IMG/VR virus record: IMGVR_UViG_3300023179_000009
Coordinates: 124,001 to 188,000 of that record
Length of the DNA stretch: 64,000 nucleotides
Direction: 5' to 3' (one strand)
A program made the position numbers and the translations under genes. The stretch's first letter is position 1. Each line of letters begins with the position of its first letter. The notes below the pieces were generated by a model. That model had not been told where the DNA came from. It did not search any database and was given only the letters and a program-made list of their open reading frames with translations. Positions 1 through 53,236 of this stretch are shown in pieces.

Positions 1-37
1 GAACAATTATTTTAAAATAAAAACAGAATACAATAAA

Positions 38-2065
38 ATGCCAAAAACTTTACAGGGAATTGATGATTTAGGAGATTATGATAATACTTCTATTTCAACA
101 TATGTACATTGGACAACAGATGATTATAGGGTTTTTGTTCCTGCTGCGCCCACTATTAAAAGTTTAATACCGGGCGTTTATGAAATGCACAAGAGCGATA
201 ACATTGGTTTATATTTTGAAAAAATACCAGTACGTTCAGAAGGTCTCCTAAGATTCCCTGACACCAATTCAGAGCGTGTTGTAAAAGAGATTCAAAAATT
301 TTGGGAAAGAGAAGATGTTTTTGAATCGTATAGTTTAACGTATAAGCGGGGAATCCTGCTATACGGCCCCCCAGGTTGCCATGCCAAGGGAACGAAAATT
401 TTGATGTACAACGGCGATCTTAAAAAAGTTGAAGACATAGTTGTCGGTGACGAGGTTATGGGACCAGACAGTCGGCCTAGGCGTGTTTTGGAACTTATAA
501 GAGGCCAAGATCAAATGTATAAAATTACTCCAAATCGTGGCGAACCTTTTGTTGTGAACGGTCATCACATTTTGAGTTTACAAAGAAGCAGCAAAAGAGA
601 CTGCGCAACGCCAGAAATATTAAATATTTCTTTAAATAATTACAAAAAATTATCTAAGCCATCTCAAGTCAAATATAAATTACGTCGTTGTGCTGTAGAT
701 TTTTCGAATCTATCAAATGAAGTAATCGTAGATCCTTATTTTTTAGGTGTTTGGTTAGGAGACGGCTCAGAGAATAAAACCGAAATCAACACCGCTGATA
801 AAGAGATAAAAGATTATTTATATCAAATAGCAAGTAGTTATAATCTACACGTAACAGAGAGAAGGAAAACGGATTCTATTTGTTGCAGTTATACACTCTC
901 TAGTAATGGAGGCATTGGCGAAAATGGCTTGCGTAATGATTTGAAAAAAATCGGGGTATTTAATTCAAAACACATTCCAAATGAATATTTTGTGGCTTCA
1001 AGAGAAGTCCGCTTGCAACTTCTAGCAGGGATAATTGACACAGACGGTGGTTATTCAACGGCTTCTTGGAGGAAGAATCAAAAATTTAAAAATAAAGGCT
1101 ATAAAGGTTATTTTGAAATAATTCAAAAGAGGGTCGATCTATCCAATCAAATTGTAAAATTGGCAAGAAGTCTTGGATTTGGAGTTACTATTCGTAGTTG
1201 TAAAAAAACAATTAAAAAAACCGGGTTTGTAGGAGAATATCAAAGAATTAGTATTTTTGGAGACATTTCCATTATTCCTACAAAAATTCTTAGAAAGAAT
1301 GCTCTTAAAGGTCGTGCAAATAAAGACCCACTTCGCACGGGAATATCTTTAATAGAATCTTTGGGCTTTGGTGATTTTTATGGCTTCACGCTGTCGGGAG
1401 ATCATCTATACCTCACAGATGATTTTATTGTTCACCACAACTCTGGTAAATCGTGTACAATTCAATTAATTATGGAAGATGTGGTGAACAGAGAAGGAAT
1501 TGTCATAAAGTTCACAGATCCTTTTTTGTTTACCCAAGGCATGCGAGTTCTTAGACAGATACAAGAAGATACACCTGTGGTTGTCATAATTGAAGATATA
1601 GATTCTTTTTTAGAAATTTATAACGAATCTGAGATACTAAATGTTTTAGACGGAGTAAACGAAGTCAATAAAGTTGTTTTTTTGGCTACCACTAATTACC
1701 CAGAAAAACTCGGAGCAAGAATAGTAAACAGACCCAGTCGTTTCGATAAAAGGTTTAGAATAGGTTACCCTTCAAAGACTTCAAGAAGAATGTATTTCGA
1801 ACACTTGATTGGCGAAGGAGATGAAAATAAACTTAAACAAAAAATATCAGATTTAAATTTGGATTTGGATCGCTGGGTCGAAGACACAGACGAGATGTCG
1901 GTTGCCCATCTCAAGGAGTTGTTTATACAAGTTGTTATTATAGGTGACACTTATGAAGAATCAATAGAAACTTTAAAAAGTATGAAAGAAAACCTTGAAG
2001 ATAAAGAGTTCGACAGTGAGATAGGGTTTAGTGGTCCAAAAAAATCCAAGAACTACTACGGTTAA
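38..2065 (+). CDS. AAA+ ATPase (intein-interrupted)
   Basis: Walker A reconstituted after intein removal (LLYGPPG|SGKS), Walker B VVVIIEDID, sensor/Arg finger FLATTNYPEKLGARIVNRPSRFD. Confidence 0.9.
   Translation: MPKTLQGIDDLGDYDNTSISTYVHWTTDDYRVFVPAAPTIKSLIPGVYEMHKSDNIGLYFEKIPVRSEGLLRFPDTNSERVVKEIQKFWEREDVFESYSLTYKRGILLYGPPGCHAKGTKILMYNGDLKKVEDIVVGDEVMGPDSRPRRVLELIRGQDQMYKITPNRGEPFVVNGHHILSLQRSSKRDCATPEILNISLNNYKKLSKPSQVKYKLRRCAVDFSNLSNEVIVDPYFLGVWLGDGSENKTEINTADKEIKDYLYQIASSYNLHVTERRKTDSICCSYTLSSNGGIGENGLRNDLKKIGVFNSKHIPNEYFVASREVRLQLLAGIIDTDGGYSTASWRKNQKFKNKGYKGYFEIIQKRVDLSNQIVKLARSLGFGVTIRSCKKTIKKTGFVGEYQRISIFGDISIIPTKILRKNALKGRANKDPLRTGISLIESLGFGDFYGFTLSGDHLYLTDDFIVHHNSGKSCTIQLIMEDVVNREGIVIKFTDPFLFTQGMRVLRQIQEDTPVVVIIEDIDSFLEIYNESEILNVLDGVNEVNKVVFLATTNYPEKLGARIVNRPSRFDKRFRIGYPSKTSRRMYFEHLIGEGDENKLKQKISDLNLDLDRWVEDTDEMSVAHLKELFIQVVIIGDTYEESIETLKSMKENLEDKEFDSEIGFSGPKKSKNYYG
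377..1441 (+). mobile_element. Intein (355 aa) with in-frame LAGLIDADG homing endonuclease, inserted in the Walker A motif
   Basis: Starts CHAKGTKILM, block B VVNGHHIL, LAGLIDADG motifs LGVWLGDG and LLAGIIDTDG, ends FYGFTLSGDHLYLTDDFIVHHN followed by Ser+1. Confidence 0.93.
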
Positions 2066-2080
2066 TTTGGAGTATTAATT

Positions 2081-5000
2081 GTGCTACAAGAACGCCAGCA
2101 ACTTTTAAAACTGTGTGTTTCCTCTTTGGAAAAAAAAGGTTTTTCCGAGGATCAGAGATACAAAGACAGGCTCAAGAGAGAATTGAAAGAAATAGATGCC
2201 CAAGGAGAGCATGAGTATCTATTAAATTTACAAAATCAATTTCAATCAAAGGGATTGATTTTGCCTTATAATCAACATAATCTTCTTGTTTATTATCTTT
2301 TAGATTTGTGTAAAGATTTTGATATTGAAAAAGAATATGCTTGGTATCAAGGTGAGTTTCCAGATATTGATATCGATTATTTAAAAGATGTTCGTGATTA
2401 CATTAAACGTACTTGGGCCGCAGAAAATTTTGGTCAAGATAAAATTTGCGAGATTGGAACATATGGAACAAGTGGTATTAAATCGGCCATTTTAGATATG
2501 GCACGAGTCCATGACGCTGAAAAAGATAGAATTCAGGCTATTACAACAAAGATGTCCGACAAGGACGAAGATGGGCATGATTTAGAGTGGGAAAAAGCTT
2601 TAGAGACATACCCGGAATTTAAATCTTATTGTGAAGATCACTCAGAAGTTGCCGATGCAGCCAAAGCATTATTAGACAGAATACGCACAGGGGGCGTTCA
2701 CGCTGGTGGCTTAATTGTTGCTGATCGTCGTTTAGATGGATTTGTTCCACTTGAAGTTAGAATGGTGAACAAAGAAAATCCAAATGGGGTTATTTGCTCG
2801 GCTTGGACAGAAGGTTTGAACCGTCAAGATCTTGGCCCTGTGGGTTTGATTAAATTTGACTTGTTGGTAATTAGCAATTTAATGCAAATAGCCTTGGCTT
2901 GTGACCTTATAAAAAAAAGACACAGTATTGAAAAAATATGCGCCGCACCTAATCAATGGGATTTCTCCGATTTAAATTATCTCAATGACCCAAAAGCATT
3001 GGCCATGGCAGACAAGGGTGATTTAAAATGTATTTTTCAATTTGATAGCGAAGGCATAAGGAATCTGGTTAAACGTGGTGGGGTTTCTAGTTTTGATGAT
3101 TTAGCAGCTTACTCAGCCATTTACCGCCCAGGGCCTTTAAATATGTCGATGGACGTTCATTATTGTAAAAGAAAAAGAGGCGAAGAGCCTTATGAAATTC
3201 ACCCTTTAATGCAAAAGTCTCTTGCTAAGACTTACGGAATTTTGGTTTTTCAAGAACAAGTTATGGACATCTTGCGTGTTGTTGGTGAAATCCCAGACAT
3301 GCACACAGAGAAGGTCCGAAAAGCTATCTCTAAAAAGAAAATTAAAGATTTTATAAAATACAAAGAAATGTTTATTAAAAATGGACAAAAAAATTTAGGA
3401 GAAAGCGAAGAATATGTTGAGAATTTGTGGAGTACTATAGAAAGTTTTGCAGAATATGGTTTTAATAAAACTTTGACCGAAGATACTATAATAGATTGTG
3501 TTGATGGCTCTAAACAAATTAAACACATAGGTGTTGGCGACAAGGTTTATTGCATAAACGAAAAAGGAGAACGAGCAGAAACAGAAGTTGTAGCAGTTCA
3601 CGATCATGGCGTAATTGATGTTGTTGAAGTCACATTTGATGACGGGTACTCGGTGAAATGCACATTAGATCATAAATTTTTAACCGAAGAAGGGCAAATT
3701 CCACTTTGGAAAATTATTCAAGATAATTTGGTTGTGCTTAGTTCTCCGTTGGGAGAACAAAATGCCACAGAGAAAAAATTGGGAAGCAATTTGCGGAGAG
3801 ATTCTCGGCAACAGAAAAAAAATTATAGAACATCGCAAGAATTGTACAAAATGCAGAGAGATGTATTTGCAAAAGAGAACAGAAAAATACAATCACAAAT
3901 CTCATTGCGGAAAGAAATTTCCAACAAAACACAAACTAGCAGATCACTTGAAAGAATGTCAGGACTGTATTTATTTGAAATGGCGAGAGACAGGAAAGAA
4001 ACACATATCTCGATGCGGGATAGAATTTTTGAGATACAGTTTGTTGGCGGAACACCATCGTCATTGTGCGAAATGCACGGAAATAAAAAAAGAGAACATT
4101 CAAAATCGGATGGACAAGTTAAACAAAGACAACCTGTCTCCAGATCGCAAGGCTATATTTTCTGCAACTGCCAAGAAAACTTCGGCAAGGAAAGATGTTC
4201 AAGAAGCAAGATCTGCACAATTAAAAAGATGGAGGGACAACAACCCAGAAGAGTTTGCGAGATCTATAGAAAAGGCACAACATGCTCCCAAAAAATCAAA
4301 AATGGAAACGTGGTTGAGAAAATATCTGGGATGGAAGCCGAAGAAAATATGTTGTGGGAAAGACAGGAAATTTGTGGATTTAGTAAAGAAAAATATTTGG
4401 ATAGAGGTGGACGGACCGTTCCACTTTTGGCAGGTCGGATCAAAATCGAACAAAAGAGGTCACAATTTAAACTATGTTCAACTCAGAGACCAGATGCTCA
4501 AAGAGGAGTGTTTGAGGAGACAAGATATAATGCTTTTGAGATTGAGCATGACTTGTTTTCACAAAAAAACAGGAGAAATGAAGAAGGAAAGTTTGGATTT
4601 GTTCCAGACTATGCTCCGATCTCCAATACCGGGGATTTGGTGCATAGGAAAGTTCTACGAATTGTGCCCGTGGGCAAAAGACAATGTTACGATCTTGAAG
4701 TTGCTGTAAGCACACATAACTTTATTTTGCCAAATGGGGTTGTCACATCGAATAGCCACTCTTATGCATACACTTATATATCGGCAAGGCTTCTTTGGCT
4801 AAAGGCGCATTATCCTCTTGAGTTCTACGCTGCTATTTTGATGTGTGAAACCGATACGGATAAAATAAAAGATTACAAGATCGATGCCGAGAAGCATGGA
4901 ATTGAAGTTTTGCCTATTCATATAAATTATTCTAAAGAAAATTTTACTATTCACGATAACAAAATATATTTTGGTTTTTCCAATATTAAATCTATAGGAG

Positions 5001-6124
5001 AAGAAGTTGCAAAAAGAATAGTGACCAATCAGCCATATAAAAACGTAACAGACTTCCTTGATAGGTTCGGCACAGATTTAACTTGCATCAAAGCTCTTGT
5101 TTCTCTTGGTGTTTTTGGTGATAATCGTGTCAAGATTAGAAAATTTACAGAGTACTATAAGGGAAAAATAAACTCAAGAAAAGATAGAAAAAAAAGATTC
5201 GAGCAATCTTTAGAAAAAAAATTACAAGAATTAAAAGATTTGTTGTTGGAAGAAATTAATGAAAACGATCCTGATTTTCAATCTCTTTGCACATTTACAC
5301 CGGAATCTCAGTCTTTATGGGTGTCTCGATTTGAAAAAATTACAAGAGAAGTTGATTACAATTATCAAGGCAATAAAAGAAAAAAACAAGTTACTTTTTT
5401 AAAACAATTAGAAGATTTGGCAAAAAAAAGATCTAGTATAATTGAAAACTTTCATCTTAAAGAAAAAGAAGATGATGGTGTGGATTCTTATGAATTTTTT
5501 AATACTTCATCTATCAAAATAGACGATAAAGAAATTGATATCTTGAATGATGAGTTAATTATTGATGGCAAAAAGTTTTTTCCAAAAGCCGAATCTAATT
5601 ATTATGGTTTTCAATGGAAGCACATTTTAGAAACTTGTGATCAATACTCCGGAAAAACTATTGATAATTTTTTACAAGAAATTGAAAATCAAAACGACAA
5701 GTCCGGAGTTATACAAATTCAAGTTTTAGCCGTGAAGAAGAAAACCAGCAAAAGAGGCACAGATTTTTATAGCATGGAAGTTGAGGATGCAAACGGGAAA
5801 AAGGTTTTTGTCAATGTTTGGAAAGATGATTATCTAAGGTTTAAAGATAGGTTCGTATCTGGCGAGTTGTTGTCTATAAAAGTAACGCCGCCATCTGGTG
5901 GTTTTAGCACATTCACCTTCTGCTCTATTCCAAGACACAAACGCAAAGAAATTCCTGATAAGGAGTGTGACCAAAGATGTATTGTTCTTGAGCCTCCAAA
6001 ATTTGAAAATTTAAAGCCCGACACTGAAGAAAGAATCATGAAATTTAATACGGAGATTCTCAAGAAGCAATCTTCAAAAAACACCACAATTAAAACTGGT
6101 GGTTTTGAAATTTTTCAAAATTAA
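2081..6124 (+). CDS. dnaE: DNA polymerase III alpha subunit, lacking N-terminal PHP domain, intein-containing
   Basis: Catalytic FPDIDID, GVHAGG, GLIKFDLL, FQFDS, SAIYRPGP, YGILVFQEQVM, YGFNK|SHS, KAHYPLEFYAA and a C-terminal OB fold; GTG start with GGAG upstream. Confidence 0.93.
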   Translation: MLQERQQLLKLCVSSLEKKGFSEDQRYKDRLKRELKEIDAQGEHEYLLNLQNQFQSKGLILPYNQHNLLVYYLLDLCKDFDIEKEYAWYQGEFPDIDIDYLKDVRDYIKRTWAAENFGQDKICEIGTYGTSGIKSAILDMARVHDAEKDRIQAITTKMSDKDEDGHDLEWEKALETYPEFKSYCEDHSEVADAAKALLDRIRTGGVHAGGLIVADRRLDGFVPLEVRMVNKENPNGVICSAWTEGLNRQDLGPVGLIKFDLLVISNLMQIALACDLIKKRHSIEKICAAPNQWDFSDLNYLNDPKALAMADKGDLKCIFQFDSEGIRNLVKRGGVSSFDDLAAYSAIYRPGPLNMSMDVHYCKRKRGEEPYEIHPLMQKSLAKTYGILVFQEQVMDILRVVGEIPDMHTEKVRKAISKKKIKDFIKYKEMFIKNGQKNLGESEEYVENLWSTIESFAEYGFNKTLTEDTIIDCVDGSKQIKHIGVGDKVYCINEKGERAETEVVAVHDHGVIDVVEVTFDDGYSVKCTLDHKFLTEEGQIPLWKIIQDNLVVLSSPLGEQNATEKKLGSNLRRDSRQQKKNYRTSQELYKMQRDVFAKENRKIQSQISLRKEISNKTQTSRSLERMSGLYLFEMARDRKETHISMRDRIFEIQFVGGTPSSLCEMHGNKKREHSKSDGQVKQRQPVSRSQGYIFCNCQENFGKERCSRSKICTIKKMEGQQPRRVCEIYRKGTTCSQKIKNGNVVEKISGMEAEENMLWERQEICGFSKEKYLDRGGRTVPLLAGRIKIEQKRSQFKLCSTQRPDAQRGVFEETRYNAFEIEHDLFSQKNRRNEEGKFGFVPDYAPISNTGDLVHRKVLRIVPVGKRQCYDLEVAVSTHNFILPNGVVTSNSHSYAYTYISARLLWLKAHYPLEFYAAILMCETDTDKIKDYKIDAEKHGIEVLPIHINYSKENFTIHDNKIYFGFSNIKSIGEEVAKRIVTNQPYKNVTDFLDRFGTDLTCIKALVSLGVFGDNRVKIRKFTEYYKGKINSRKDRKKRFEQSLEKKLQELKDLLLEEINENDPDFQSLCTFTPESQSLWVSRFEKITREVDYNYQGNKRKKQVTFLKQLEDLAKKRSSIIENFHLKEKEDDGVDSYEFFNTSSIKIDDKEIDILNDELIIDGKKFFPKAESNYYGFQWKHILETCDQYSGKTIDNFLQEIENQNDKSGVIQIQVLAVKKKTSKRGTDFYSMEVEDANGKKVFVNVWKDDYLRFKDRFVSGELLSIKVTPPSGGFSTFTFCSIPRHKRKEIPDKECDQRCIVLEPPKFENLKPDTEERIMKFNTEILKKQSSKNTTIKTGGFEIFQN
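3470..4753 (+). mobile_element. Intein (428 aa) in DnaE with Thr at position 1 and an out-of-frame endonuclease gene inside
   Basis: Removing TLTEDT...VVTSN restores conserved YGFNKSH; block B VKCTLDHKFLT, block F CYDLEV, C-terminal SN plus Ser+1. Confidence 0.9.
3762..4709 (+). CDS. Vsr/DUF559-like homing endonuclease with N-terminal Cys/His zinc-binding repeats, nested in the +1 frame of the DnaE intein
   Basis: GGGAGA at 3751-3756 precedes ATG 3762; motifs SKMETWL, FVDLV, WIEVDGPFH, RDQML; HxxxCxxC repeats at N-terminus. Confidence 0.82.
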   Translation: MPQRKNWEAICGEILGNRKKIIEHRKNCTKCREMYLQKRTEKYNHKSHCGKKFPTKHKLADHLKECQDCIYLKWRETGKKHISRCGIEFLRYSLLAEHHRHCAKCTEIKKENIQNRMDKLNKDNLSPDRKAIFSATAKKTSARKDVQEARSAQLKRWRDNNPEEFARSIEKAQHAPKKSKMETWLRKYLGWKPKKICCGKDRKFVDLVKKNIWIEVDGPFHFWQVGSKSNKRGHNLNYVQLRDQMLKEECLRRQDIMLLRLSMTCFHKKTGEMKKESLDLFQTMLRSPIPGIWCIGKFYELCPWAKDNVTILKLL

Positions 6125-6140
6125 ACTCTTCTATTTTAGT

Positions 6141-6593
6141 ATGGAAAATAAAAAAGAAGACACAGAATTGGTGATAGATCAAAATAATTTTAACGATTAT
6201 TTTTTTGATGTGAGAAAATTTGGCCCAAAACAAGGGCAAATTTTGGCAAAGTTTTCAGCGGTTGCTATTTTTGGAGATGGTCCAGAAAAAAGAGATTTAA
6301 TAAAAGTTTTAAAACGAGACAAAGCAGAAGCCGCTGCTATGGTTATGAAAAAAATACACTGCTGTAAAGAGCCTGATTGTTATAAAATTTGTAGAGAAAT
6401 GTGCGAGGATCTTATATCCGGTATGTCAGAAGATGATGTTGCCAAAAAAGAACATGAGTTTATTATAGAAGCTTTTTATTATGCTAATCGTGAATATGTT
6501 CCAAAAAATGATCCCCACTGGGAAACTATAGAACTTATTAAATATGACCCAGAGACTAAAACTTTTAAATCTAATATTGAATTAAAAATTTAA
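6141..6593 (+). CDS. Hypothetical protein
   Basis: Long open frame with plausible composition; first ATG at 6141 (track extends upstream to 6099). Confidence 0.7.
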   Translation: MENKKEDTELVIDQNNFNDYFFDVRKFGPKQGQILAKFSAVAIFGDGPEKRDLIKVLKRDKAEAAAMVMKKIHCCKEPDCYKICREMCEDLISGMSEDDVAKKEHEFIIEAFYYANREYVPKNDPHWETIELIKYDPETKTFKSNIELKI

Positions 6594-6616
6594 TTAAAAA
6601 TGCTACATATACTAAT

Positions 6617-7114
6617 ATGAGCGATAATAATTATCAAGATTACAAATCTCAAATTGACGTTTGGGCTTCTATGTGGGACGAAATGGAAGGAGAAAAAGTT
6701 CATCCTTCTTTGCAAAAACCCGAGAGGTCAGAGTTTGCATCAAAAATTTTTGGTGACCAAGATTTCGAAAATGACGACCAAGAAGAAGACCCAGGTTTAA
6801 TTCAAGAGTCAGAATCAATCACACAAAACCCTGTGAGAGTTCACACTGCCGGAAGAGACGATCAACATCCAGAACCTTGTTGGGTTAAAGAAGATCTTTT
6901 GTCGGAAATCGAAAAACTAAAAAATAGTTTGTTCGATATGGAAAATAAATTAGCCAGAATGAACCAACCTGAAAAAAAATCTCAAAAAAGCAAAAATCAA
7001 AAAGATCAAGATGTTCTTAAAAAGATAGAATCTATTAGAAAAGATATTGATGATTTAAGTGACAAACTGGGGATTGGCAAACAAGACGTTAGTTTGTTTG
7101 CAGTAAAAAAATAA
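6617..7114 (+). CDS. Hypothetical acidic protein with C-terminal coiled coil
   Basis: 165-aa ORF in operon context; heptad-like C-terminus. Confidence 0.7.
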   Translation: MSDNNYQDYKSQIDVWASMWDEMEGEKVHPSLQKPERSEFASKIFGDQDFENDDQEEDPGLIQESESITQNPVRVHTAGRDDQHPEPCWVKEDLLSEIEKLKNSLFDMENKLARMNQPEKKSQKSKNQKDQDVLKKIESIRKDIDDLSDKLGIGKQDVSLFAVKK

Positions 7115-7153
7115 TTTGGTAATATAGTTGAAAACCCAGAGTACTCTGTTTTG

Positions 7154-8206
7154 ATGATTTACGAAGATTTTTATAATAAAATTAAATCTTTAGAAAATCC
7201 TAAAGTAGCCATATTTACTCATCGTTACCCTGATCCCGATGCTATGGCATCCATGATGGGGGTTGCTTGGATTCTTAAAAAAAATTTTGGAATAGAACCA
7301 AATTTGTTTTACTCCGGAGAAATTTCACATCCTCAAAATGGAGTGATGTTGAACTTATTAAATCCAGATTCATTGAAAAAATTAGATGATAGTTTCAATA
7401 GTAAAAATTATAATTTATTTATATTAGTGGACACTGTTCCAGAAAATGCTGGATCTGATTCTTTCAATTTGAATTTTGATATAGTTATAGATCATCATAG
7501 AGAAGCACCTGTTAATTTTGATGGTGTTTTAATTCATAAAAAAGTTGGAGCTTGTGCTTCAATTGTTTATGATATGATGATTAATCTTGTTGATAAAAAT
7601 AATTGGCTAGACGAGGACTCAGACAGTGACCAAAAACTAGCGACTGCATTGATTGCCGCTATAGTTACCGACACAGAATACTTAATGTCAGATGACAGTA
7701 CAGAACATGAATTTAAAGCCTTCTCAGAACTTTTCCCTTTTAGAAATTCTAATCTTTTAAAGCAAATAGTTTTTTTCAAAAGACCAAAATTTTGGATAGA
7801 CAAAAAAGCACTCGGATCTGCCGAAGCAGAAATAACAGACGATGGTTATGCTATAGTTGGTTTGGGCATCATACCAGAGAAACATCGTGATTTAATTGCT
7901 GATATGGCAGAGGAGATGATCCACTGGACAAGCGTAGAGACAGCTATTGCTTTTGGGGTTGTCGGCGGAGACCGCATAGAAGGATCTGTTAGATCATTGA
8001 ACCCTAGCCTAACAGTTTCAGATTTTTGTAAAAAACTTGGCGGCAAGCATGGCTCTGGCGGCGGCAAACATGGGAAAGGAGCCTATAGATTAATTCTTGG
8101 CGGCATGAGTATAGATCCAGATGAGGAAGAAGAAGATGTTGAAGAGTTTTATAAATCCATAGATAAAAGAGAAATAAAAAGAATAATGAGAACAATAAAA
8201 AAATAA
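7154..8206 (+). CDS. DHH/DHHA1 family phosphoesterase (NrnA-like)
   Basis: HRYPDPDA, LVDT, IDHH, IVTDT motifs and DHHA1 SVRS...GGGKHGKG. Confidence 0.88.
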   Translation: MIYEDFYNKIKSLENPKVAIFTHRYPDPDAMASMMGVAWILKKNFGIEPNLFYSGEISHPQNGVMLNLLNPDSLKKLDDSFNSKNYNLFILVDTVPENAGSDSFNLNFDIVIDHHREAPVNFDGVLIHKKVGACASIVYDMMINLVDKNNWLDEDSDSDQKLATALIAAIVTDTEYLMSDDSTEHEFKAFSELFPFRNSNLLKQIVFFKRPKFWIDKKALGSAEAEITDDGYAIVGLGIIPEKHRDLIADMAEEMIHWTSVETAIAFGVVGGDRIEGSVRSLNPSLTVSDFCKKLGGKHGSGGGKHGKGAYRLILGGMSIDPDEEEEDVEEFYKSIDKREIKRIMRTIKK

Positions 8207-35853: not shown

Positions 35854-35915
35854 TTATTCCATATTGACATTTTGAAAAAAATTATACAATACAACCAACT
35901 GTGGAGAAAAAACTA

Positions 35916-37511
35916 ATGTCCAATAGTAATATTTTTTCAACTAAAACCAAAAAAACTGGGTTTTCTACAAATACAAAAAACAATGCTGGAGGCGATGCTT
36001 ATGAATTTGATCCAAAACATTGTTTGGCTCAAATCGCTGCCACAAACACATTTAGTGGAACTTTTTATGCAACCGCAGAGCAAAATTTTAATTTAGCCAA
36101 AGAATCTGCATTGCGTTTGAAACACGACCCAGAATTCATTGCAAAAGTTGCAATTTATTCTCGTGATAAGTCCTACATGAAAGACATGCCTTGCTTCCTG
36201 ACGGTGTTGCTCTCGGATATTAGCAAGCCTTTGTTTCGCAAAGTTTTTCGTCGTGTGGTTGATAATGGGAAAATGCTTCGAAATGTTATTCAAATGGCTC
36301 GAAGTGGAGTTGTAACCGGAAAAAAAGTTAATGTATCGGCAGGAAGTTGGAGGCACGCCATACAAGAGTGGTTTAATACTCAAAGTTCTTCTAGTATTTT
36401 TAAAGCTTCTATAGGCAACAATCCAACCATGCACGACATTTTAAGAATGTCGCACCCAAAACCAAATTCAATTGAAAAACAATCTTTGTTCGCTTACCTC
36501 TCAGGCAAAGAATTCGATTTTGAAAAACTTCCAGATCAAGTTAAAAAACTTCAAGAATTTAAATCAGGCAAATCAAAAGATATCCCTGATGTCGATTTTA
36601 GATTTTTAGACTCTTTGAATCTTGGTCAAAAAGAGTGGGAAACAATCGCTATTCAATCTCCTTGGCAAATGACAAGGATGAATCTTTTAACTTTTGCTAG
36701 ACATAATGTTTTTGCAAATGAAGATGTTATTCAAATCGTGGCAAATAAATTAAAAGACAAAAAATTAATTAAAAAGTCTCGTGCGTTTCCATACCAATTA
36801 TTCGCTGCTTGGAGACAAGTTGAGAATCAAGTTAATTATTGGATACCTGAAATAATTAAATCATCACTCGAAGAGGCTATGGAAGTTGCCATCGACAATG
36901 TCCCAGAAATCCCTGGAAAGGGTCTGGTCTGTGTGGACTGCTCTGGATCCATGACTTCACCAATAACCGGTTTTAGAAACCACAGGAGTAACTCTAGTGT
37001 ATCTTGCAGCGACGTTGCTGGACTTTTAGCTTCAGCCATACATCGAAAAAACAAATCTGTTGAGGTTTGGACTTTTTCGGATAGTGCCAACATGGTTGAA
37101 TTAGACCTTAAAGACAATGTGCTAAAAAACACAGAAAAATTAAATCGTGCTGGCGGGGGAACCAATATATCGGCACCAATGCACCGTTTCAATTCAGACT
37201 TCAAAAACGCTGATTGGATTTTATATGTATCAGACTATGAGTCTTGGATTGACTCGCCATCTGCTGGTTACGGTTATAACTCAACGGGTCTGTCCTATGA
37301 ATGGGACATTTTTAAGAAAAGAAACAATCACGCTAAATTAATTTGTTGTGATTTGACCCCTAGAGATAACTCTCAAATTTCTGTTAGAAAAGATGTTCTT
37401 CAAGTCGGAGGATTCTCAGATCAAGTTTTTGATGTCGTTTCTTCTTTTGTTTCTCAATCTAAAAGCAAAGATTTTTGGGTTGAAGAAATAAATAAAATAT
37501 CTTTGGACTAA
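35916..37511 (+). CDS. Ro60/Rsr-like TROVE-vWA RNA-binding protein
   Basis: NNAGGDAY, GTFYA, KDMP, PWQMTRMNL, SRAFPYQLF, vWA VDCSGSM, GGTNIS, VSDYESW, VGGFSDQVF; GGAG RBS 9 nt before ATG. Confidence 0.92.
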   Translation: MSNSNIFSTKTKKTGFSTNTKNNAGGDAYEFDPKHCLAQIAATNTFSGTFYATAEQNFNLAKESALRLKHDPEFIAKVAIYSRDKSYMKDMPCFLTVLLSDISKPLFRKVFRRVVDNGKMLRNVIQMARSGVVTGKKVNVSAGSWRHAIQEWFNTQSSSSIFKASIGNNPTMHDILRMSHPKPNSIEKQSLFAYLSGKEFDFEKLPDQVKKLQEFKSGKSKDIPDVDFRFLDSLNLGQKEWETIAIQSPWQMTRMNLLTFARHNVFANEDVIQIVANKLKDKKLIKKSRAFPYQLFAAWRQVENQVNYWIPEIIKSSLEEAMEVAIDNVPEIPGKGLVCVDCSGSMTSPITGFRNHRSNSSVSCSDVAGLLASAIHRKNKSVEVWTFSDSANMVELDLKDNVLKNTEKLNRAGGGTNISAPMHRFNSDFKNADWILYVSDYESWIDSPSAGYGYNSTGLSYEWDIFKKRNNHAKLICCDLTPRDNSQISVRKDVLQVGGFSDQVFDVVSSFVSQSKSKDFWVEEINKISLD

Positions 37512-51004: not shown

Positions 51005-53236
51005 ATGTCTCCGCAGAACAAGAGTTGGGTAAATTTCGCCGGCCAGTCTATAGCAAAATTACTAAATGAAGATTTTGATCTCTCTGTTTTTTTGGATCAA
51101 TTTAGAAAGTGTTCTAAAAATTTAAAAATAGAGTTGGAGGATTCGTTTATAAAAGCAATTTTGCTCAAGCCCGACAAACCTTGGCCCTATTTTTTTTTGG
51201 CAGAGATAGCCGATAGTGTAGATGATAAATTATATCTTTATCGTGAATCGCTCAAGATCACCAAGACAGACTATGCCAAAAAAATGATAGAGAGTCTGTC
51301 TGATCTGAATTTTGTTAATTTGCCAAATAAAGATATAAGTTATGAGAAATTTCCTTTATGCAAGAACGTTTTATATTTTTCCCCAGAGGCACCAGATTTT
51401 GATTGCAGCAGCGGCGGTAATAGACTTTATGAAATTTTAAAAATACTAGCAGAGTCTGATTTTAATGTTTACTTTTTGTGCAATAATTCAAAAAATATTA
51501 AACATATAAATTGTTTAAAAGATTTGAAAATTAATTGTTTTGAGGCGGATTTTTCTAAAAGAATTTTCATTCAAGATTATATTAAACAATTTAAGGAAGA
51601 AGGTTTAGTTTTTGAAGTTGCTATTTTTTCTTGGTACGATTCGGCTCATCAATACTTTGATTTTGCAAAAGAACAATACCCTGACATAAAAACAATAATA
51701 GACACTGTTGATGTCCACTGGAAAAGAGAATTTAGAGGATTTGAAAAAGGATTTTTTCAACAAAAGCAGGTTATTGAAAGAAAAAATATTGAAATTGAGG
51801 TCTATTCCAAAGCAGATGTGTTGTTGGCTGTGACTCAAGAAGATAGTTTAGAATTAAAAAAAGAACTAGGAGAAGACGCCAATGTTAAGATATTATCTAA
51901 TATTCACAAATTAAAAAACAATGAAAAACTTGGGCAAGACATTGTTTTTATAGGTAATTATAATCACACTCCCAATGTTGATGCAGTAATTGATTGTATC
52001 GATATATTTCAACAATTCTCTAACACAGATTTTTATAAAAATCTTTCTTATAAACCCAAACTAAGAATAGCTGGTCCAAACTTAGAATTTGGTATTTTAG
52101 AAAAAGCACAAAATATTGAAGATATTGTGGTTGAAGGACACGTTCACAACTTAAATGATTTTTATAAAAATGCAAAAGTTCTAATGGCTCCTATAAATTG
52201 GGGAGCAGGAATTAAAGGAAAAATTTGCGACTCATGCATCAGAGGAGTTCCAGCTATAACCACGGATATTGGCAACGAAGGAATAAATTTAATAGATAAT
52301 GAAAGTGGTTTTGTTGCCAATACGAAAGATGAGTTTTTAGAAAAATTAAAAAATGTTTATTTAATGCCCTTAGATCAACTAAAAACAATAGCTAAAAATG
52401 GACAAAATTTAATTGATTCTTTAGTTTCTCCAAGTAAAGCCAAAAATGTTCTTGTGTCTAATCTAATCCCAAAAAACATAATAATAAGCATTGTTATGTT
52501 TAACAAATTAGACATAATAAAAAATTGTTTAAATTCAATACTAAAAAAAACACAATACTCAAATTATAAAATAGCACTGACCGACAATACCCTTAATCCA
52601 GATGTAGAGAATTATGTTTTGGATATTCAAAAATTACATAAAGAAAAAATAGTATATTTTAAAAATCAATCAAATGATTATTTTGTAGAATCTAATAACA
52701 AAATATTTAATCACCCAGATTTTATCTCATCAGATGTAGTTTTGATAAATGACGATATAGAAATAGTAAGTGAATGTTGGTTATCCTACCTGTACTCAGC
52801 CGCCTATTCCGAATACGATATTTGTGCTGTTGGGGGTAAGATACTCCACCCTGATAATAAAGTCGCTGAGTGCGGTTCCGAACTAAACAATCAAGGTTTT
52901 GGTGGCCACCATGGTTATGGGTTAGATCCAAATATAGACTTTTTAAATAAACGGAGATACGTAGGATATTGTTCTGGTTGTTTGTTGTACATGAGAAGAG
53001 ATGCTTTGGATATATTTGGCGTTTTCGATAAAGATTTTGCTCCTATGTACTTTGAAGATAGTGAGTGGCAATACCGGTGTCACATTGGAGGATACAAGAC
53101 AATTTATGAACCGAAGTGTGTGGCCATCCACCATGAAGAAAAGCAAGAAAATAAACCCATGAAGAAACATCAAGAAACAAACAGAAATAAATTTTTAGAA
53201 AAATATAAAGATATAGATATAGAAAAATATAATTAA
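51005..53236 (+). CDS. Bifunctional GT4 + GT2 glycosyltransferase
   Basis: SGGNRL, FIGNYNHTPNVDA, GAGIKGKI (GT4); LINDDIE, SGCLL, YFEDSEW (GT2). Confidence 0.88.
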   Translation: MSPQNKSWVNFAGQSIAKLLNEDFDLSVFLDQFRKCSKNLKIELEDSFIKAILLKPDKPWPYFFLAEIADSVDDKLYLYRESLKITKTDYAKKMIESLSDLNFVNLPNKDISYEKFPLCKNVLYFSPEAPDFDCSSGGNRLYEILKILAESDFNVYFLCNNSKNIKHINCLKDLKINCFEADFSKRIFIQDYIKQFKEEGLVFEVAIFSWYDSAHQYFDFAKEQYPDIKTIIDTVDVHWKREFRGFEKGFFQQKQVIERKNIEIEVYSKADVLLAVTQEDSLELKKELGEDANVKILSNIHKLKNNEKLGQDIVFIGNYNHTPNVDAVIDCIDIFQQFSNTDFYKNLSYKPKLRIAGPNLEFGILEKAQNIEDIVVEGHVHNLNDFYKNAKVLMAPINWGAGIKGKICDSCIRGVPAITTDIGNEGINLIDNESGFVANTKDEFLEKLKNVYLMPLDQLKTIAKNGQNLIDSLVSPSKAKNVLVSNLIPKNIIISIVMFNKLDIIKNCLNSILKKTQYSNYKIALTDNTLNPDVENYVLDIQKLHKEKIVYFKNQSNDYFVESNNKIFNHPDFISSDVVLINDDIEIVSECWLSYLYSAAYSEYDICAVGGKILHPDNKVAECGSELNNQGFGGHHGYGLDPNIDFLNKRRYVGYCSGCLLYMRRDALDIFGVFDKDFAPMYFEDSEWQYRCHIGGYKTIYEPKCVAIHHEEKQENKPMKKHQETNRNKFLEKYKDIDIEKYN

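What the first reader, a model, noticed from the sequence alone, without database searches (positions are those of the whole stretch)
3470..4753. Dual-coding intein: homing endonuclease overprinted in the +1 frame inside an uninterrupted DnaE intein
Seen: the DnaE frame runs without a stop from 2081 to 6124, while a second 315-aa ORF (ATG 3762 to TAA 4709, own GGGAGA RBS) lies wholly inside the intein in the +1 frame. The +1 product has Zn-finger-like repeats and a Vsr/DUF559-type nuclease core (IEVDGPFH, RDQML). The intein-frame text over the same bases looks like low-information shadow protein, sitting between blocks B and F. Known: inteins normally carry the endonuclease in frame, and 'fractured genes' have split inteins flanking a free-standing Vsr-like endonuclease. 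Inference: both frames are under selection, since AT-rich non-coding frames should hit a stop roughly every 15-25 codons (estimate). This may be an evolutionary intermediate between contiguous and split inteins. I cannot verify whether similar cases are published.
Basis: partly seen in the sequence, partly recalled or inferred. Interest (0 to 1): 0.92.

Follow-up and report, generated by a model that had tools for sequence, protein, structure and literature searches.

The report
Intein with out-of-frame homing endonuclease
A giant phage's DNA polymerase gene carries a self-splicing protein insert (intein) whose middle 950 bases also encode, in a second reading frame, the DNA-cutting enzyme that spreads the insert; relatives of this rare but already described layout include both unbroken and broken versions of the gene.

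Summary
DnaE (2081-6124) is one open frame through a 428-aa intein (3470-4753). A 315-aa ORF (3762-4709) lies inside it in the +1 frame.

This is not chance. Synonymous-codon shuffles predict about 18 stops in the intein frame; there are none. At least 20 diverged relatives (HEN identity down to about 26%, GC 0.33-0.61) also have none. Across them, 0 of 2,091 stop-creating codon contexts are used, against 29.7% T-ending codons elsewhere.

The +1 product folds confidently (pLDDT 90.5) as zinc fingers plus a Vsr/DUF559-like nuclease and is under purifying selection. The intein-frame text over the same bases is unstructured (pLDDT about 28) and poorly conserved. It is kept only stop-free, as a linker between two conserved HINT halves.

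Intein and HEN move together between divergent DnaE genes. Near-identical occupied and empty alleles exist.

Homologous loci at the same site are truly fractured (split intein, 22-60 stops). One split lineage is nested inside the contiguous clade.

The architecture, a contiguous intein with an out-of-frame HEN, is already published (Gorbalenya 1998; Gogarten-lab preprints 2025 and 2026). I found no report of it for this same-strand Vsr-like HEN, which has been described only in split inteins. Verdict: a new variant of a known kind, of moderate-to-high interest.

The parts
2081..6124 (+). DnaE (DNA polymerase III alpha) precursor ORF, 1347 aa, one uninterrupted frame
   Evidence: Pfam DNA_pol3_alpha, DNA_pol3_finger, HHH_6 and Intein_splicing
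2081..3469 (+). N-extein, ending in the conserved YGFNK motif
   Evidence: empty-site relatives read YGFNx|SH without interruption
3470..4753 (+). Intein, 428 aa: Thr1, block B TLDH, C-terminal TSN followed by Ser+1
   Evidence: Pfam Intein_splicing 35.7 bits against a cut-off of 35.8
3470..3757 (+). N-terminal HINT half (intein residues 1-96)
   Evidence: AF2 pLDDT 87-92; conserved in alignment A3
3758..4609 (+). Intein-frame linker (residues 97-380): stop-free, unstructured and poorly conserved; the reverse side of the HEN gene
   Evidence: AF2 pLDDT about 28; identity well below that of the HEN frame; 0 stops against 17.8 expected
4610..4753 (+). C-terminal HINT half (residues 381-428)
   Evidence: AF2 pLDDT about 88; D-L-E-V, H and N-S-H invariant
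3762..4709 (+). Homing endonuclease ORF, 315 aa, +1 frame relative to DnaE
   Evidence: AF2 mean pLDDT 90.5; substitutions follow this frame
3741..3758 (+). Hairpin GTTCTCC-N4-GGAGAAC enclosing the HEN Shine-Dalgarno sequence (GGGAGA, 3751-3756)
   Evidence: fold z = -3.8. The same stem occurs in L041, L042, L043 and L002; stems of different sequence that also pair the SD occur in L003, L013, L044, L047 and L049
3780..4064 (+). HEN N-terminal region: three beta-beta-alpha zinc-finger-like units (HEN residues about 7-101)
   Evidence: AF2 secondary structure; Foldseek match to CTCF zinc fingers, prob 0.99; C49, H62 and C66 conserved
4335..4706 (+). HEN nuclease core (residues about 192-315) with invariant E215, D217, G218, H221, F222, D243, R260
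   Evidence: Foldseek 1vsr prob 0.69; BFVD homing, VSR and restriction endonucleases, prob 1.00, rmsd about 4 A; DUF559 in 11 of 40 relatives
4610..4709 (+). 100-nt stretch where both frames encode functional protein: the HEN C-terminus and the start of the C-HINT half
   Evidence: both translations are conserved across loci; the same overlap is present in the fractured relative L004
4754..6124 (+). C-extein, beginning SHSYAYTYIS

Best explanation
This is a mobile, non-canonical intein in the DnaE gene of an uncultured jumbo phage (459-kb contig). A free-standing-type Vsr/DUF559-like homing endonuclease gene sits at the usual endonuclease position of a HINT splicing domain. It is on the same strand but in the +1 frame, with its own SD and ATG. 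Shown: the DnaE frame runs through the endonuclease gene with no stop. This openness is maintained by selection through synonymous codon choice in the endonuclease gene: no T-ending codon precedes a codon starting with AA, AG or GA. The endonuclease frame carries the amino-acid constraint and folds. The intein-frame translation of the same bases is an unstructured 284-residue tether between two conserved HINT halves. Intein and endonuclease are inherited and transferred together, and occupied and empty alleles coexist. Inferred: ribosomes translate one DnaE precursor, the two HINT halves fold together across the tether, and the intein splices in cis using oxyester chemistry (Thr1, Ser+1, terminal Asn). 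The endonuclease is made separately by internal initiation at 3762, probably at a low level and possibly coupled to dnaE translation, because its SD is locked in a hairpin inside the coding region. The endonuclease would cut empty YGFNK|SH alleles in co-infecting phages, and repair would copy the whole unit in. A frameshift or stop in the tether turns the arrangement into a fractured gene with a split intein. This has happened at least once in this family (L004).
For: ORFs and stop maps. Chance excluded: (0/2091 against 29.7% in 20 contiguous loci; 34.4% against 35.9% in 19 split loci). Recurrence in independent assemblies from many samples, GC 0.33-0.61, HEN identity to the window 26-96%. Frame-specific constraint: (differences at HEN codon position 3 > 1 > 2; HEN identity 82% against 58% in the intein frame for window/L041, and 70% against 44% for window/L042). 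Structures: HEN pLDDT 90.5; HINT halves about 90, linker about 28. Nuclease family. Catalytic residues of the intein conserved. SD hairpin. Co-transfer of HINT and HEN, discordant with the exteins: (Spearman 0.89 for HINT-HEN; L041 extein 48% against HINT 89%). Occupied and empty near-identical alleles: (95.6% and 97.3% flank identity). Sporadic distribution. Split relatives at the same site and a split lineage nested in the contiguous clade. Published precedents for the architecture.
Against: Nothing has been tested biochemically: splicing, endonuclease activity, target site and use of ATG 3762 are all inferred. Thr at intein position 1 is unusual, since surveys of cysteine-less inteins list Ser1, and the penultimate residue is Ser rather than His, so splicing competence cannot be assumed. 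The Pfam intein model scores just below its cut-off. The window HEN alone hits no nuclease model, and the Vsr match in the PDB is weak. The SD hairpin is absent from the deepest contiguous clades. How a roughly 300-codon alternative frame became stop-free in the first place is unexplained.
Confidence: 0.82

Rival explanations
1. It is functionally a fractured gene. The N and C parts are made separately and trans-splice, and the open frame has no role.
For: Homologous loci at the same site are truly split. The HEN 3' end overlaps the C-intein as in published fractured genes.
Against: There is no stop to end the N part and no ATG at the position where L004 starts its C part. 0 of 2,091 stop-creating contexts in 20 lineages cannot be neutral. 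Split relatives carry 22-60 stops in the same relative frame.
Confidence: 0.03
2. Assembly or sequencing artefact: the endonuclease is really in frame with the intein, or the gene is really broken.
For: Metagenome assembly; no reads were inspected.
Against: An in-frame reading would need two compensating indels. The same relative frames occur in more than 20 independent assemblies from different samples and sources (JGI, ENA, Logan, NCBI). The codon-context signature runs along the whole ORF.
Confidence: 0.01
3. Decaying element: the endonuclease is a dead remnant and the intein is effectively a mini-intein with a junk insert.
For: The homing cycle predicts HEN decay. A relative (L100/L101) is a mini-intein with an internally deleted HEN remnant.
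Against: The HEN ORF is intact in all contiguous loci, with the substitution pattern of purifying selection, invariant catalytic residues and a confident fold. Recent transfer and an occupied/empty polymorphism are also seen.
Confidence: 0.05
4. The intein-frame linker is itself a functional, intrinsically disordered domain, for example one that tunes splicing, so both frames encode selected proteins.
For: The frame is kept open over long evolutionary times. A few positions look semi-conserved in A3.
Against: Its identity tracks what the HEN frame imposes and is far lower than HEN identity. pLDDT is about 28. Its length varies from about 230 to 300 residues among loci, and it is largely deleted in L100.
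Confidence: 0.06
5. The endonuclease is made by programmed +1 ribosomal frameshifting from the DnaE frame, as a fusion to the N-extein and N-intein, not by internal initiation.
For: The two frames overlap on one mRNA, and a hairpin lies at the junction.
Against: A conserved ATG preceded by an SD at proper spacing occurs in most loci, and the products start MPK(R/K)K. No slippery motif was noted. Free-standing split relatives use the same start.
Confidence: 0.03

Closest known systems
Non-canonical inteins with the HEN in an overlapping reading frame: cyanobacterial DnaX intein (+2 ORF LAGLIDADG; Gorbalenya 1998; Phillips, DeSimone and Gogarten, bioRxiv 10.64898/2026.09.14.751524) and actinophage inteins with an endonuclease VII-like HEN in frame 3 (Gosselin, Arsenault and Gogarten, bioRxiv 10.1101/2025.01.02.630785)
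   Same: A contiguous host-frame ORF runs through the HEN region. The HEN is in another frame with its own SD. The host-frame segment is predicted disordered. Selection is frame-dependent. The origin is interpreted as secondary invasion of a mini-intein by a free-standing HEN.
   Different: The HEN family differs (Vsr/DUF559-like with zinc fingers rather than LAGLIDADG or EndoVII), as do the host (DnaE of uncultured large aquatic phages) and the frame (+1). Here the same intein allele also exists in truly split form, so both states can be compared within one family.
Fractured genes: split inteins flanking a free-standing Vsr-like HEN (Dassa et al. 2009, PMC2677866), including three DnaE loci
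   Same: Same HEN family traits, phage DNA-metabolism host genes, HEN at the canonical position between the HINT halves, 3' overlap of the HEN with the C-intein coding region, and a hairpin over the HEN RBS. Relatives L004-L006, L010 and L019-L035 fit this description exactly.
   Different: In the window the N part has no stop, the C part has no start of its own, and the intein frame is held open through the whole HEN. The overlap with C-HINT is 100 nt, against 6-69 bp reported. Their 'DnaE-2' HEN has its Vsr-like part at positions 196-315, like the window's 315-aa protein. Whether that locus was really split could not be checked because the supplement is not held.
Actinophage full inteins with an antisense VSR-like HEN (bioRxiv 10.1101/2025.01.02.630785)
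   Same: A VSR-like HEN nested in a contiguous intein without being part of the intein polypeptide.
   Different: There the HEN is on the opposite strand. Here it is on the same strand in the +1 frame, which puts it on the dnaE mRNA and allows translational coupling.
Vsr-like / EDxHD homing endonucleases (I-Bth0305I, PDB 3R3P; named from my own knowledge and mentioned) and E. coli Vsr (PDB 1VSR/1CW0)
   Same: An alpha/beta nuclease core with conserved acidic and His residues (here E215, D217, H221, D243). Foldseek matches to 1vsr and to phage proteins named homing, VSR or restriction endonuclease. DUF559 hits in relatives.
   Different: The N-terminal DNA-binding part differs: three C2H2-like fingers in the window clade and Ros/MucR-type fingers in the split clade. 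3R3P was not among the top PDB matches.
ShiLan insertion with a hidden out-of-frame HNH endonuclease in a phage methylase (PMC11855218)
   Same: A host frame kept free of stops across an out-of-frame HEN in an actively homing phage element (abstract).
   Different: That element was reported as identifiable neither as an intein nor as a self-splicing intron. Here both HINT halves and the splice-junction residues are present.

Membership tests
Class 1 intein (HINT splicing domain) | In-frame insertion that interrupts a conserved host motif, with relatives that have the uninterrupted motif | tested here: met
   YGFNK|intein|SH in the window. About 51 of 60 related viral DnaE genes read YGFNx|SH directly. 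L103 is an empty allele 96-97% identical to the occupied L008.
Class 1 intein (HINT splicing domain) | Nucleophile at intein position 1 (Cys or Ser; Thr chemically possible) | tested here: inconclusive
   The window has Thr1, as do L040-L043, L008/L009 and L015-L017. Sister loci have Ser1. Thr1 is not among the surveyed Ser1 cysteine-less inteins. It is conserved in several lineages, which argues for function.
Class 1 intein (HINT splicing domain) | Block B T-x-x-H, C-terminal Asn, and a nucleophile at C-extein +1 | tested here: met
   TLDH at intein residues 65-68, and ...TSN|S. H76, N436 and S437 are invariant in A3. The penultimate His is replaced by Ser, a variation I recall from other inteins.
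Class 1 intein (HINT splicing domain) | HINT fold formed by the N and C halves | tested here: met
   AF2: strands of both halves at pLDDT 87-92. Pfam Intein_splicing spans residues 480-890 at 35.7 bits, 0.1 below the cut-off.
Class 1 intein (HINT splicing domain) | Protein splicing activity | not testable with these tools
   Needs expression and detection of the ligated exteins.
Non-canonical intein with out-of-frame HEN | Host frame uninterrupted through the HEN region, beyond chance | tested here: met
   0 stops against 17.8 expected; 0/2091 risky contexts in 20 loci.
Non-canonical intein with out-of-frame HEN | Complete HEN ORF with its own start signals in another frame between the splicing blocks | tested here: met
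   ATG 3762, with an SD at 3751-3756, between block B and block F.
Non-canonical intein with out-of-frame HEN | Amino-acid constraint and fold in the HEN frame but not in the host frame | tested here: met
Fractured gene / naturally split intein (Dassa 2009) | N-extein plus N-intein ORF ended by a stop before the HEN; C-intein plus C-extein ORF with its own initiator | tested here: not met
   No stop in the DnaE frame from 2081 to 6124. The feature is met by relatives L004-L006, L010 and L019-L035.
Fractured gene / naturally split intein (Dassa 2009) | Free-standing-type Vsr-like HEN gene on the same strand between the intein halves, overlapping the C-intein coding region | tested here: met
   The overlap is 4610-4709.
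Vsr-like / DUF559 (restriction-endonuclease-like) homing endonuclease | Match to a family model | tested here: inconclusive
   The window protein has no hit. 11 of 40 aligned relatives hit DUF559 (best E 4.8e-5); others hit RAP, MTES_1575 and DUF2726.
Vsr-like / DUF559 (restriction-endonuclease-like) homing endonuclease | Fold of the catalytic core | tested here: met
   BFVD: 120-130 columns, rmsd about 4 A, prob 1.00 to phage homing, VSR and restriction endonucleases. PDB 1vsr: prob 0.69, TM 0.44 on the target.
Vsr-like / DUF559 (restriction-endonuclease-like) homing endonuclease | Conserved catalytic acidic and His residues | tested here: met
   E215, D217, H221 and D243 are invariant in 40 sequences. 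Their equivalence to Vsr active-site residues is inferred, not superposed.
Vsr-like / DUF559 (restriction-endonuclease-like) homing endonuclease | Site-specific cleavage of the intein-less allele | not testable with these tools
   Indirect support only: co-transfer and occupied/empty alleles.

The most novel reading that the evidence does not exclude
The contiguous dual-coded arrangement is the ancestral state of this intein/HEN family, and the gateway through which fractured genes arise. An invaded intein first survives as one polypeptide with a stop-free tether. It later breaks by a junction frameshift or a stop, after which stops accumulate irreversibly. On this reading the split DnaE inteins of this family arose at least twice from contiguous ancestors. 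In addition, the SD-sequestering hairpin inside the dnaE coding frame would couple HEN synthesis to passage of dnaE-translating ribosomes. This would add a step to the Dassa model, in which invasion fractures the gene directly. It would also offer a natural series (empty, contiguous, split, mini) for testing how split inteins are born.
Probability: 0.35. Interest if true: 0.75.

Novelty: new variant of a known kind. Interest (0 to 1): 0.6.

Why it matters
It shows with unusually clean statistics that a reading frame can be kept open purely as a tether. Selection acts only on which synonymous codon precedes certain codons of the overlapping gene.

It places a same-strand Vsr-like endonuclease, so far reported only in split inteins, inside a contiguous intein. 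It also provides one homologous family that contains empty sites, contiguous dual-coded inteins, fractured genes and a mini-intein with a deleted endonuclease. That makes the long-standing question of how split inteins and fractured genes originate directly testable, by comparison and by simple splicing assays.

There are two practical points. Gene callers miss one of the two genes or cut the polymerase into pieces, so such elements are under-annotated in phage genomes. And the family is a source of cysteine-free Ser1/Thr1 inteins, both cis- and trans-splicing, of the kind sought for protein engineering.

Tried and rejected
- Pfam, PHROGs and PDB sequence searches with the window HEN alone gave nothing useful. 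A PDB profile search with alignment A1 found only a Ros/MucR zinc finger. The nuclease assignment therefore rests on structure and on hits of relatives.
- tblastn of the HEN against 50,697 deposited phage genomes found no match. The N-HINT half found only distant inteins in other host genes. No cultured phage with this element was found.
- Single-protein locus scans returned only the source contig. Alignment-based scans were needed.
- I considered the NX-motif histidine of Ser1 inteins (PMC10189870). The family's invariant HDHG is not preceded by Arg or Lys as that motif requires, so I make no claim.
- I looked by eye for a T4-late-promoter-like TATAAATA upstream of the HEN, as in Dassa 2009. 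Only an imperfect CATAAATT lies in the block B codons, so I make no claim.
- An Rfam scan of 1-8000 found no RNA family, which excludes a group I intron reading.
- A single origin of the contiguous state as one clade is rejected (p-AU 0.0007). The root is unknown, so the direction of the deep change is unresolved.
- The supplement of Dassa 2009 is not held, so their DnaE-2 locus could not be compared.
Full report
**Observation**

The window belongs to a 458,813-bp viral contig, IMGVR_UViG_3300023179_000009, with 32% GC.

The ORF listing gives a 1347-aa ORF at 2081-6124 and, inside it in the +1 frame, an ORF at 3732-4709 that is 315 aa from ATG 3762. GGGAGA lies five bases upstream of that ATG.

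Pfam assigns the long ORF to the DNA polymerase III alpha subunit (NTPase, finger and HHH_6 domains), with an intein splicing domain spanning residues 480-890.

The intein is exactly 3470-4753, which is 428 aa. It follows YGFNK, starts with Thr, has block B TLDH, and ends TSN before Ser-His of the C-extein.

Between 3470 and 4753 the DnaE frame has no stop. The HEN frame has none between 3684 and its own stop codon. The third frame has 34. The 341-codon doubly open stretch compares with a maximum of 82 codons elsewhere in the window.

**Chance is excluded**

I shuffled synonymous codons within the HEN ORF, keeping its protein and its own codon usage. This gives a mean of 17.8 stops in the intein frame and never fewer than 8 in 10,000 trials; 0 are observed.

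The HEN has homologs, and their genomic contexts show the same arrangement repeatedly. Alignment-based scans of viral and metagenome contigs returned about 60 loci. All of them are phage DnaE genes with a homologous intein at the same YGFNK|SH site and a homologous HEN.

In about half of these loci a host ORF runs straight through the HEN with zero stops, always in the HEN -1 frame. These loci have GC from 0.33 to 0.61 and HEN identity to the window from 96% down to about 26%. The other loci have 22-60 stops in that frame.

The way stops are avoided is visible at codon level:
- In 20 contiguous loci, none of 2,091 codons that precede an AA-, AG- or GA-starting codon ends in T. Elsewhere 29.7% of codons end in T.
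- In 19 split loci the two figures are 34.4% and 35.9%.

**Which frame codes for what**

Among relatives, differences are concentrated at HEN codon position 3, then position 1, then position 2. HEN amino-acid identity greatly exceeds identity of the intein-frame translation of the same bases: 82% against 58% for window/L041, and 70% against 44% for window/L042.

AlphaFold2 with a 40-sequence alignment folds the +1 product at mean pLDDT 90.5. The model has three beta-beta-alpha zinc-finger-like units, a helical region and an alpha/beta core.

Support for the domain assignments:
- The fingers match CTCF zinc-finger arrays (prob 0.99).
- The core matches E. coli Vsr only weakly in the PDB (prob 0.69, TM 0.44 on the target).
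- In the viral structure library the core aligns over 120-130 columns at about 4 A rmsd, prob 1.00, to phage proteins named homing endonuclease, VSR endonuclease, restriction endonuclease, DUF2726 and group I intron endonuclease.
- Eleven of 40 relatives hit Pfam DUF559, and 14 hit the Ros/MucR zinc finger.
- E215, D217, G218, H221, F222, D243 and R260 are invariant.

The intein-frame product gives the opposite picture. The two HINT halves are confident (pLDDT 87-92), and the 284 residues between them are at about 28. So the middle of the intein polypeptide is a stop-free tether with no conserved sequence or structure. The last 100 nt of the HEN (4610-4709) overlap the start of the C-terminal HINT half, and there both frames are conserved.

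**Expression signals**

The HEN SD is enclosed in a 7-bp hairpin at 3741-3758, with a fold z-score of -3.8. The same stem occurs in L041, L042, L043 and L002. The sister clade (L003, L013, L044, L047, L049) has stems of unrelated sequence that again pair with the GGAG. L012, L014 and the deepest contiguous clades show no clear hairpin. Dassa et al. describe RBS-sequestering hairpins upstream of free-standing HENs in fractured genes. Here the hairpin lies inside a translated frame. That suggests, as an inference only, that HEN initiation is held low and is opened transiently by ribosomes reading dnaE.

**Mobility**

HINT and HEN identities co-vary (Spearman 0.89) and disagree with extein identities:
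- L041 and L042 have exteins 48-50% identical to the window, but HINT 87-89% and HEN 71-82%.
- L044 and L047 have exteins 74-76% identical, but HINT 55-62% and HEN 51-52%.

Most related viral DnaE genes have an empty YGFNx|SH site. L103 is an empty allele whose flanks are 95.6% and 97.3% identical in DNA to those of the occupied L008, with the element precisely absent. These are the expected traces of homing, or of precise loss, of the intein and HEN as one unit.

**Relation to split inteins**

L004-L006, L010 and L019-L035 are true fractured genes. In L004 and L010 the N-intein ends at a TGA that overlaps the HEN ATG. In L004 the C-intein has its own Met, lies in another frame, and stops are at the expected density.

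A careful maximum-likelihood tree of 46 HENs has two well-supported halves:
- One half is contiguous, with the split L004 nested inside it (support 97/94).
- In the other half a contiguous pair, L063/L065, is sister to a large split clade.

Two state changes suffice, and a single clade of all contiguous loci is rejected (p-AU 0.0007). Whatever the root, L004 documents a contiguous-to-split conversion. Relative to its contiguous kin, the N-intein-to-HEN phase has shifted while the HEN-to-C-intein phase is kept. The direction of the deeper change is unresolved. The reverse direction would require purging tens of stops. Yet this must have happened at least once, because free-standing HENs have no reason to keep that frame open. 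How it happened is unexplained.

**What is known**

Contiguous inteins whose HEN lies in another frame or on the other strand were proposed by Gorbalenya in 1998 (cited). They have recently been analysed for the cyanobacterial DnaX intein (a +2 LAGLIDADG ORF, a disordered host-frame segment, frame-dependent omega). They have also been analysed for actinophage inteins: an EndoVII-like HEN in frame 3, and antisense LAGLIDADG and antisense VSR-like HENs. The latter paper states that VSR-like HENs had otherwise been reported only with split inteins (Dassa 2009).

The window is therefore not a new architecture. In the library searched I found no report of a same-strand, out-of-frame VSR-like HEN in a contiguous intein. 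I also found no report of a family that holds contiguous and fractured forms of one intein allele.

Dassa's 'DnaE-2' HEN has its Vsr-like part at positions 196-315, which matches the window's 315-aa protein. All known members of the window's clade are contiguous, so that locus may have been contiguous too. This could not be checked.

**Limits**

Nothing here shows splicing, cleavage or translation directly. Thr1 and the Ser-Asn terminus are unusual, though Thr1 is conserved in several lineages. HEN start codons in some deep clades (L015, L016) are uncertain. The loci share ancestry and are not statistically independent, but the divergence among them (HEN codon position 3 differs at about 50% of sites) means stops would have arisen many times without selection.

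**Verdict**

It is a new variant of a known kind, with interest 0.6.

Noticed in passing
window 38-2065 (+): The gene just upstream of dnaE is an AAA ATPase that carries a canonical intein with an in-frame LAGLIDADG endonuclease (Hom_end_hint and Hom_end). It is inserted in the Walker A loop (GPPG|C...HN|SGKS). A canonical and a non-canonical intein therefore sit in adjacent genes.
   Followed up: partly
window 3470-3472; also L040-L043, L008/L009, L015-L017: The intein begins with Thr rather than Cys or Ser. Sister loci have Ser1. Together with Ser+1 and a Ser-Asn terminus, this is a cysteine-free catalytic set. The survey of cysteine-less inteins that I read lists Ser1 only (PMC10189870).
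   Followed up: partly
L036:2938-4140: In a 61% GC relative the out-of-frame HEN is inserted right after the first strand of the HINT domain (CVCYNQPI...), not at the usual site, and the rest of a Cys1 mini-intein follows intact. The host frame has 0 stops, against 24 in the third frame. This looks like a contiguous counterpart of atypically split inteins.
   Followed up: partly
L100/L101:about 1900-2500: A mini-intein of the same family (about 190 aa) in which the HEN is internally deleted. A short +1 ORF still joins the HEN start (MPKRRED...) to its C-terminal tail where it overlaps the C-HINT half.
   Followed up: partly
L112 and L090 (junction at 2500|2501): The same DnaE site also hosts unrelated elements. 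L112 has a canonical Cys1 intein with an in-frame LAGLIDADG domain. L090 is a fractured gene with a free-standing LAGLIDADG-type ORF between the N- and C-intein. YGFNK|SH is an insertion hot spot.
   Followed up: partly
HEN N-termini, alignments A1 and A2: The DNA-binding module differs between the two halves of the HEN tree. The mostly contiguous half has two or three C2H2-like fingers, with variable copy number. The mostly split half has Ros/MucR-type fingers (PF05443). The central TAKKTSAR...LKRWRDNNPEEF region and the nuclease core are shared.
   Followed up: partly
window 2081-3469: This DnaE has no PHP-domain hit, and its match starts at position 100 of the DNA_pol3_alpha profile. Some relatives (L010, L016) have about 900-1000 residues before the intein, against 463 here. 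The PHP part may be missing or encoded elsewhere.
   Followed up: no
L002, L003, L004, L008, L010 gene calls: Automatic gene callers in the source collections either cut the contiguous DnaE into pieces around the HEN or would omit the HEN. Such loci are therefore mis-annotated as broken polymerases.
   Followed up: partly
window 35901-37511 (+): An ORF with TROVE (Ro60) and vWA domains, i.e. a Ro60-like RNA-binding protein homolog encoded by the phage. A DHH-family phosphoesterase (7151-8206) and a double glycosyltransferase (51005-53236) are also present.
   Followed up: no
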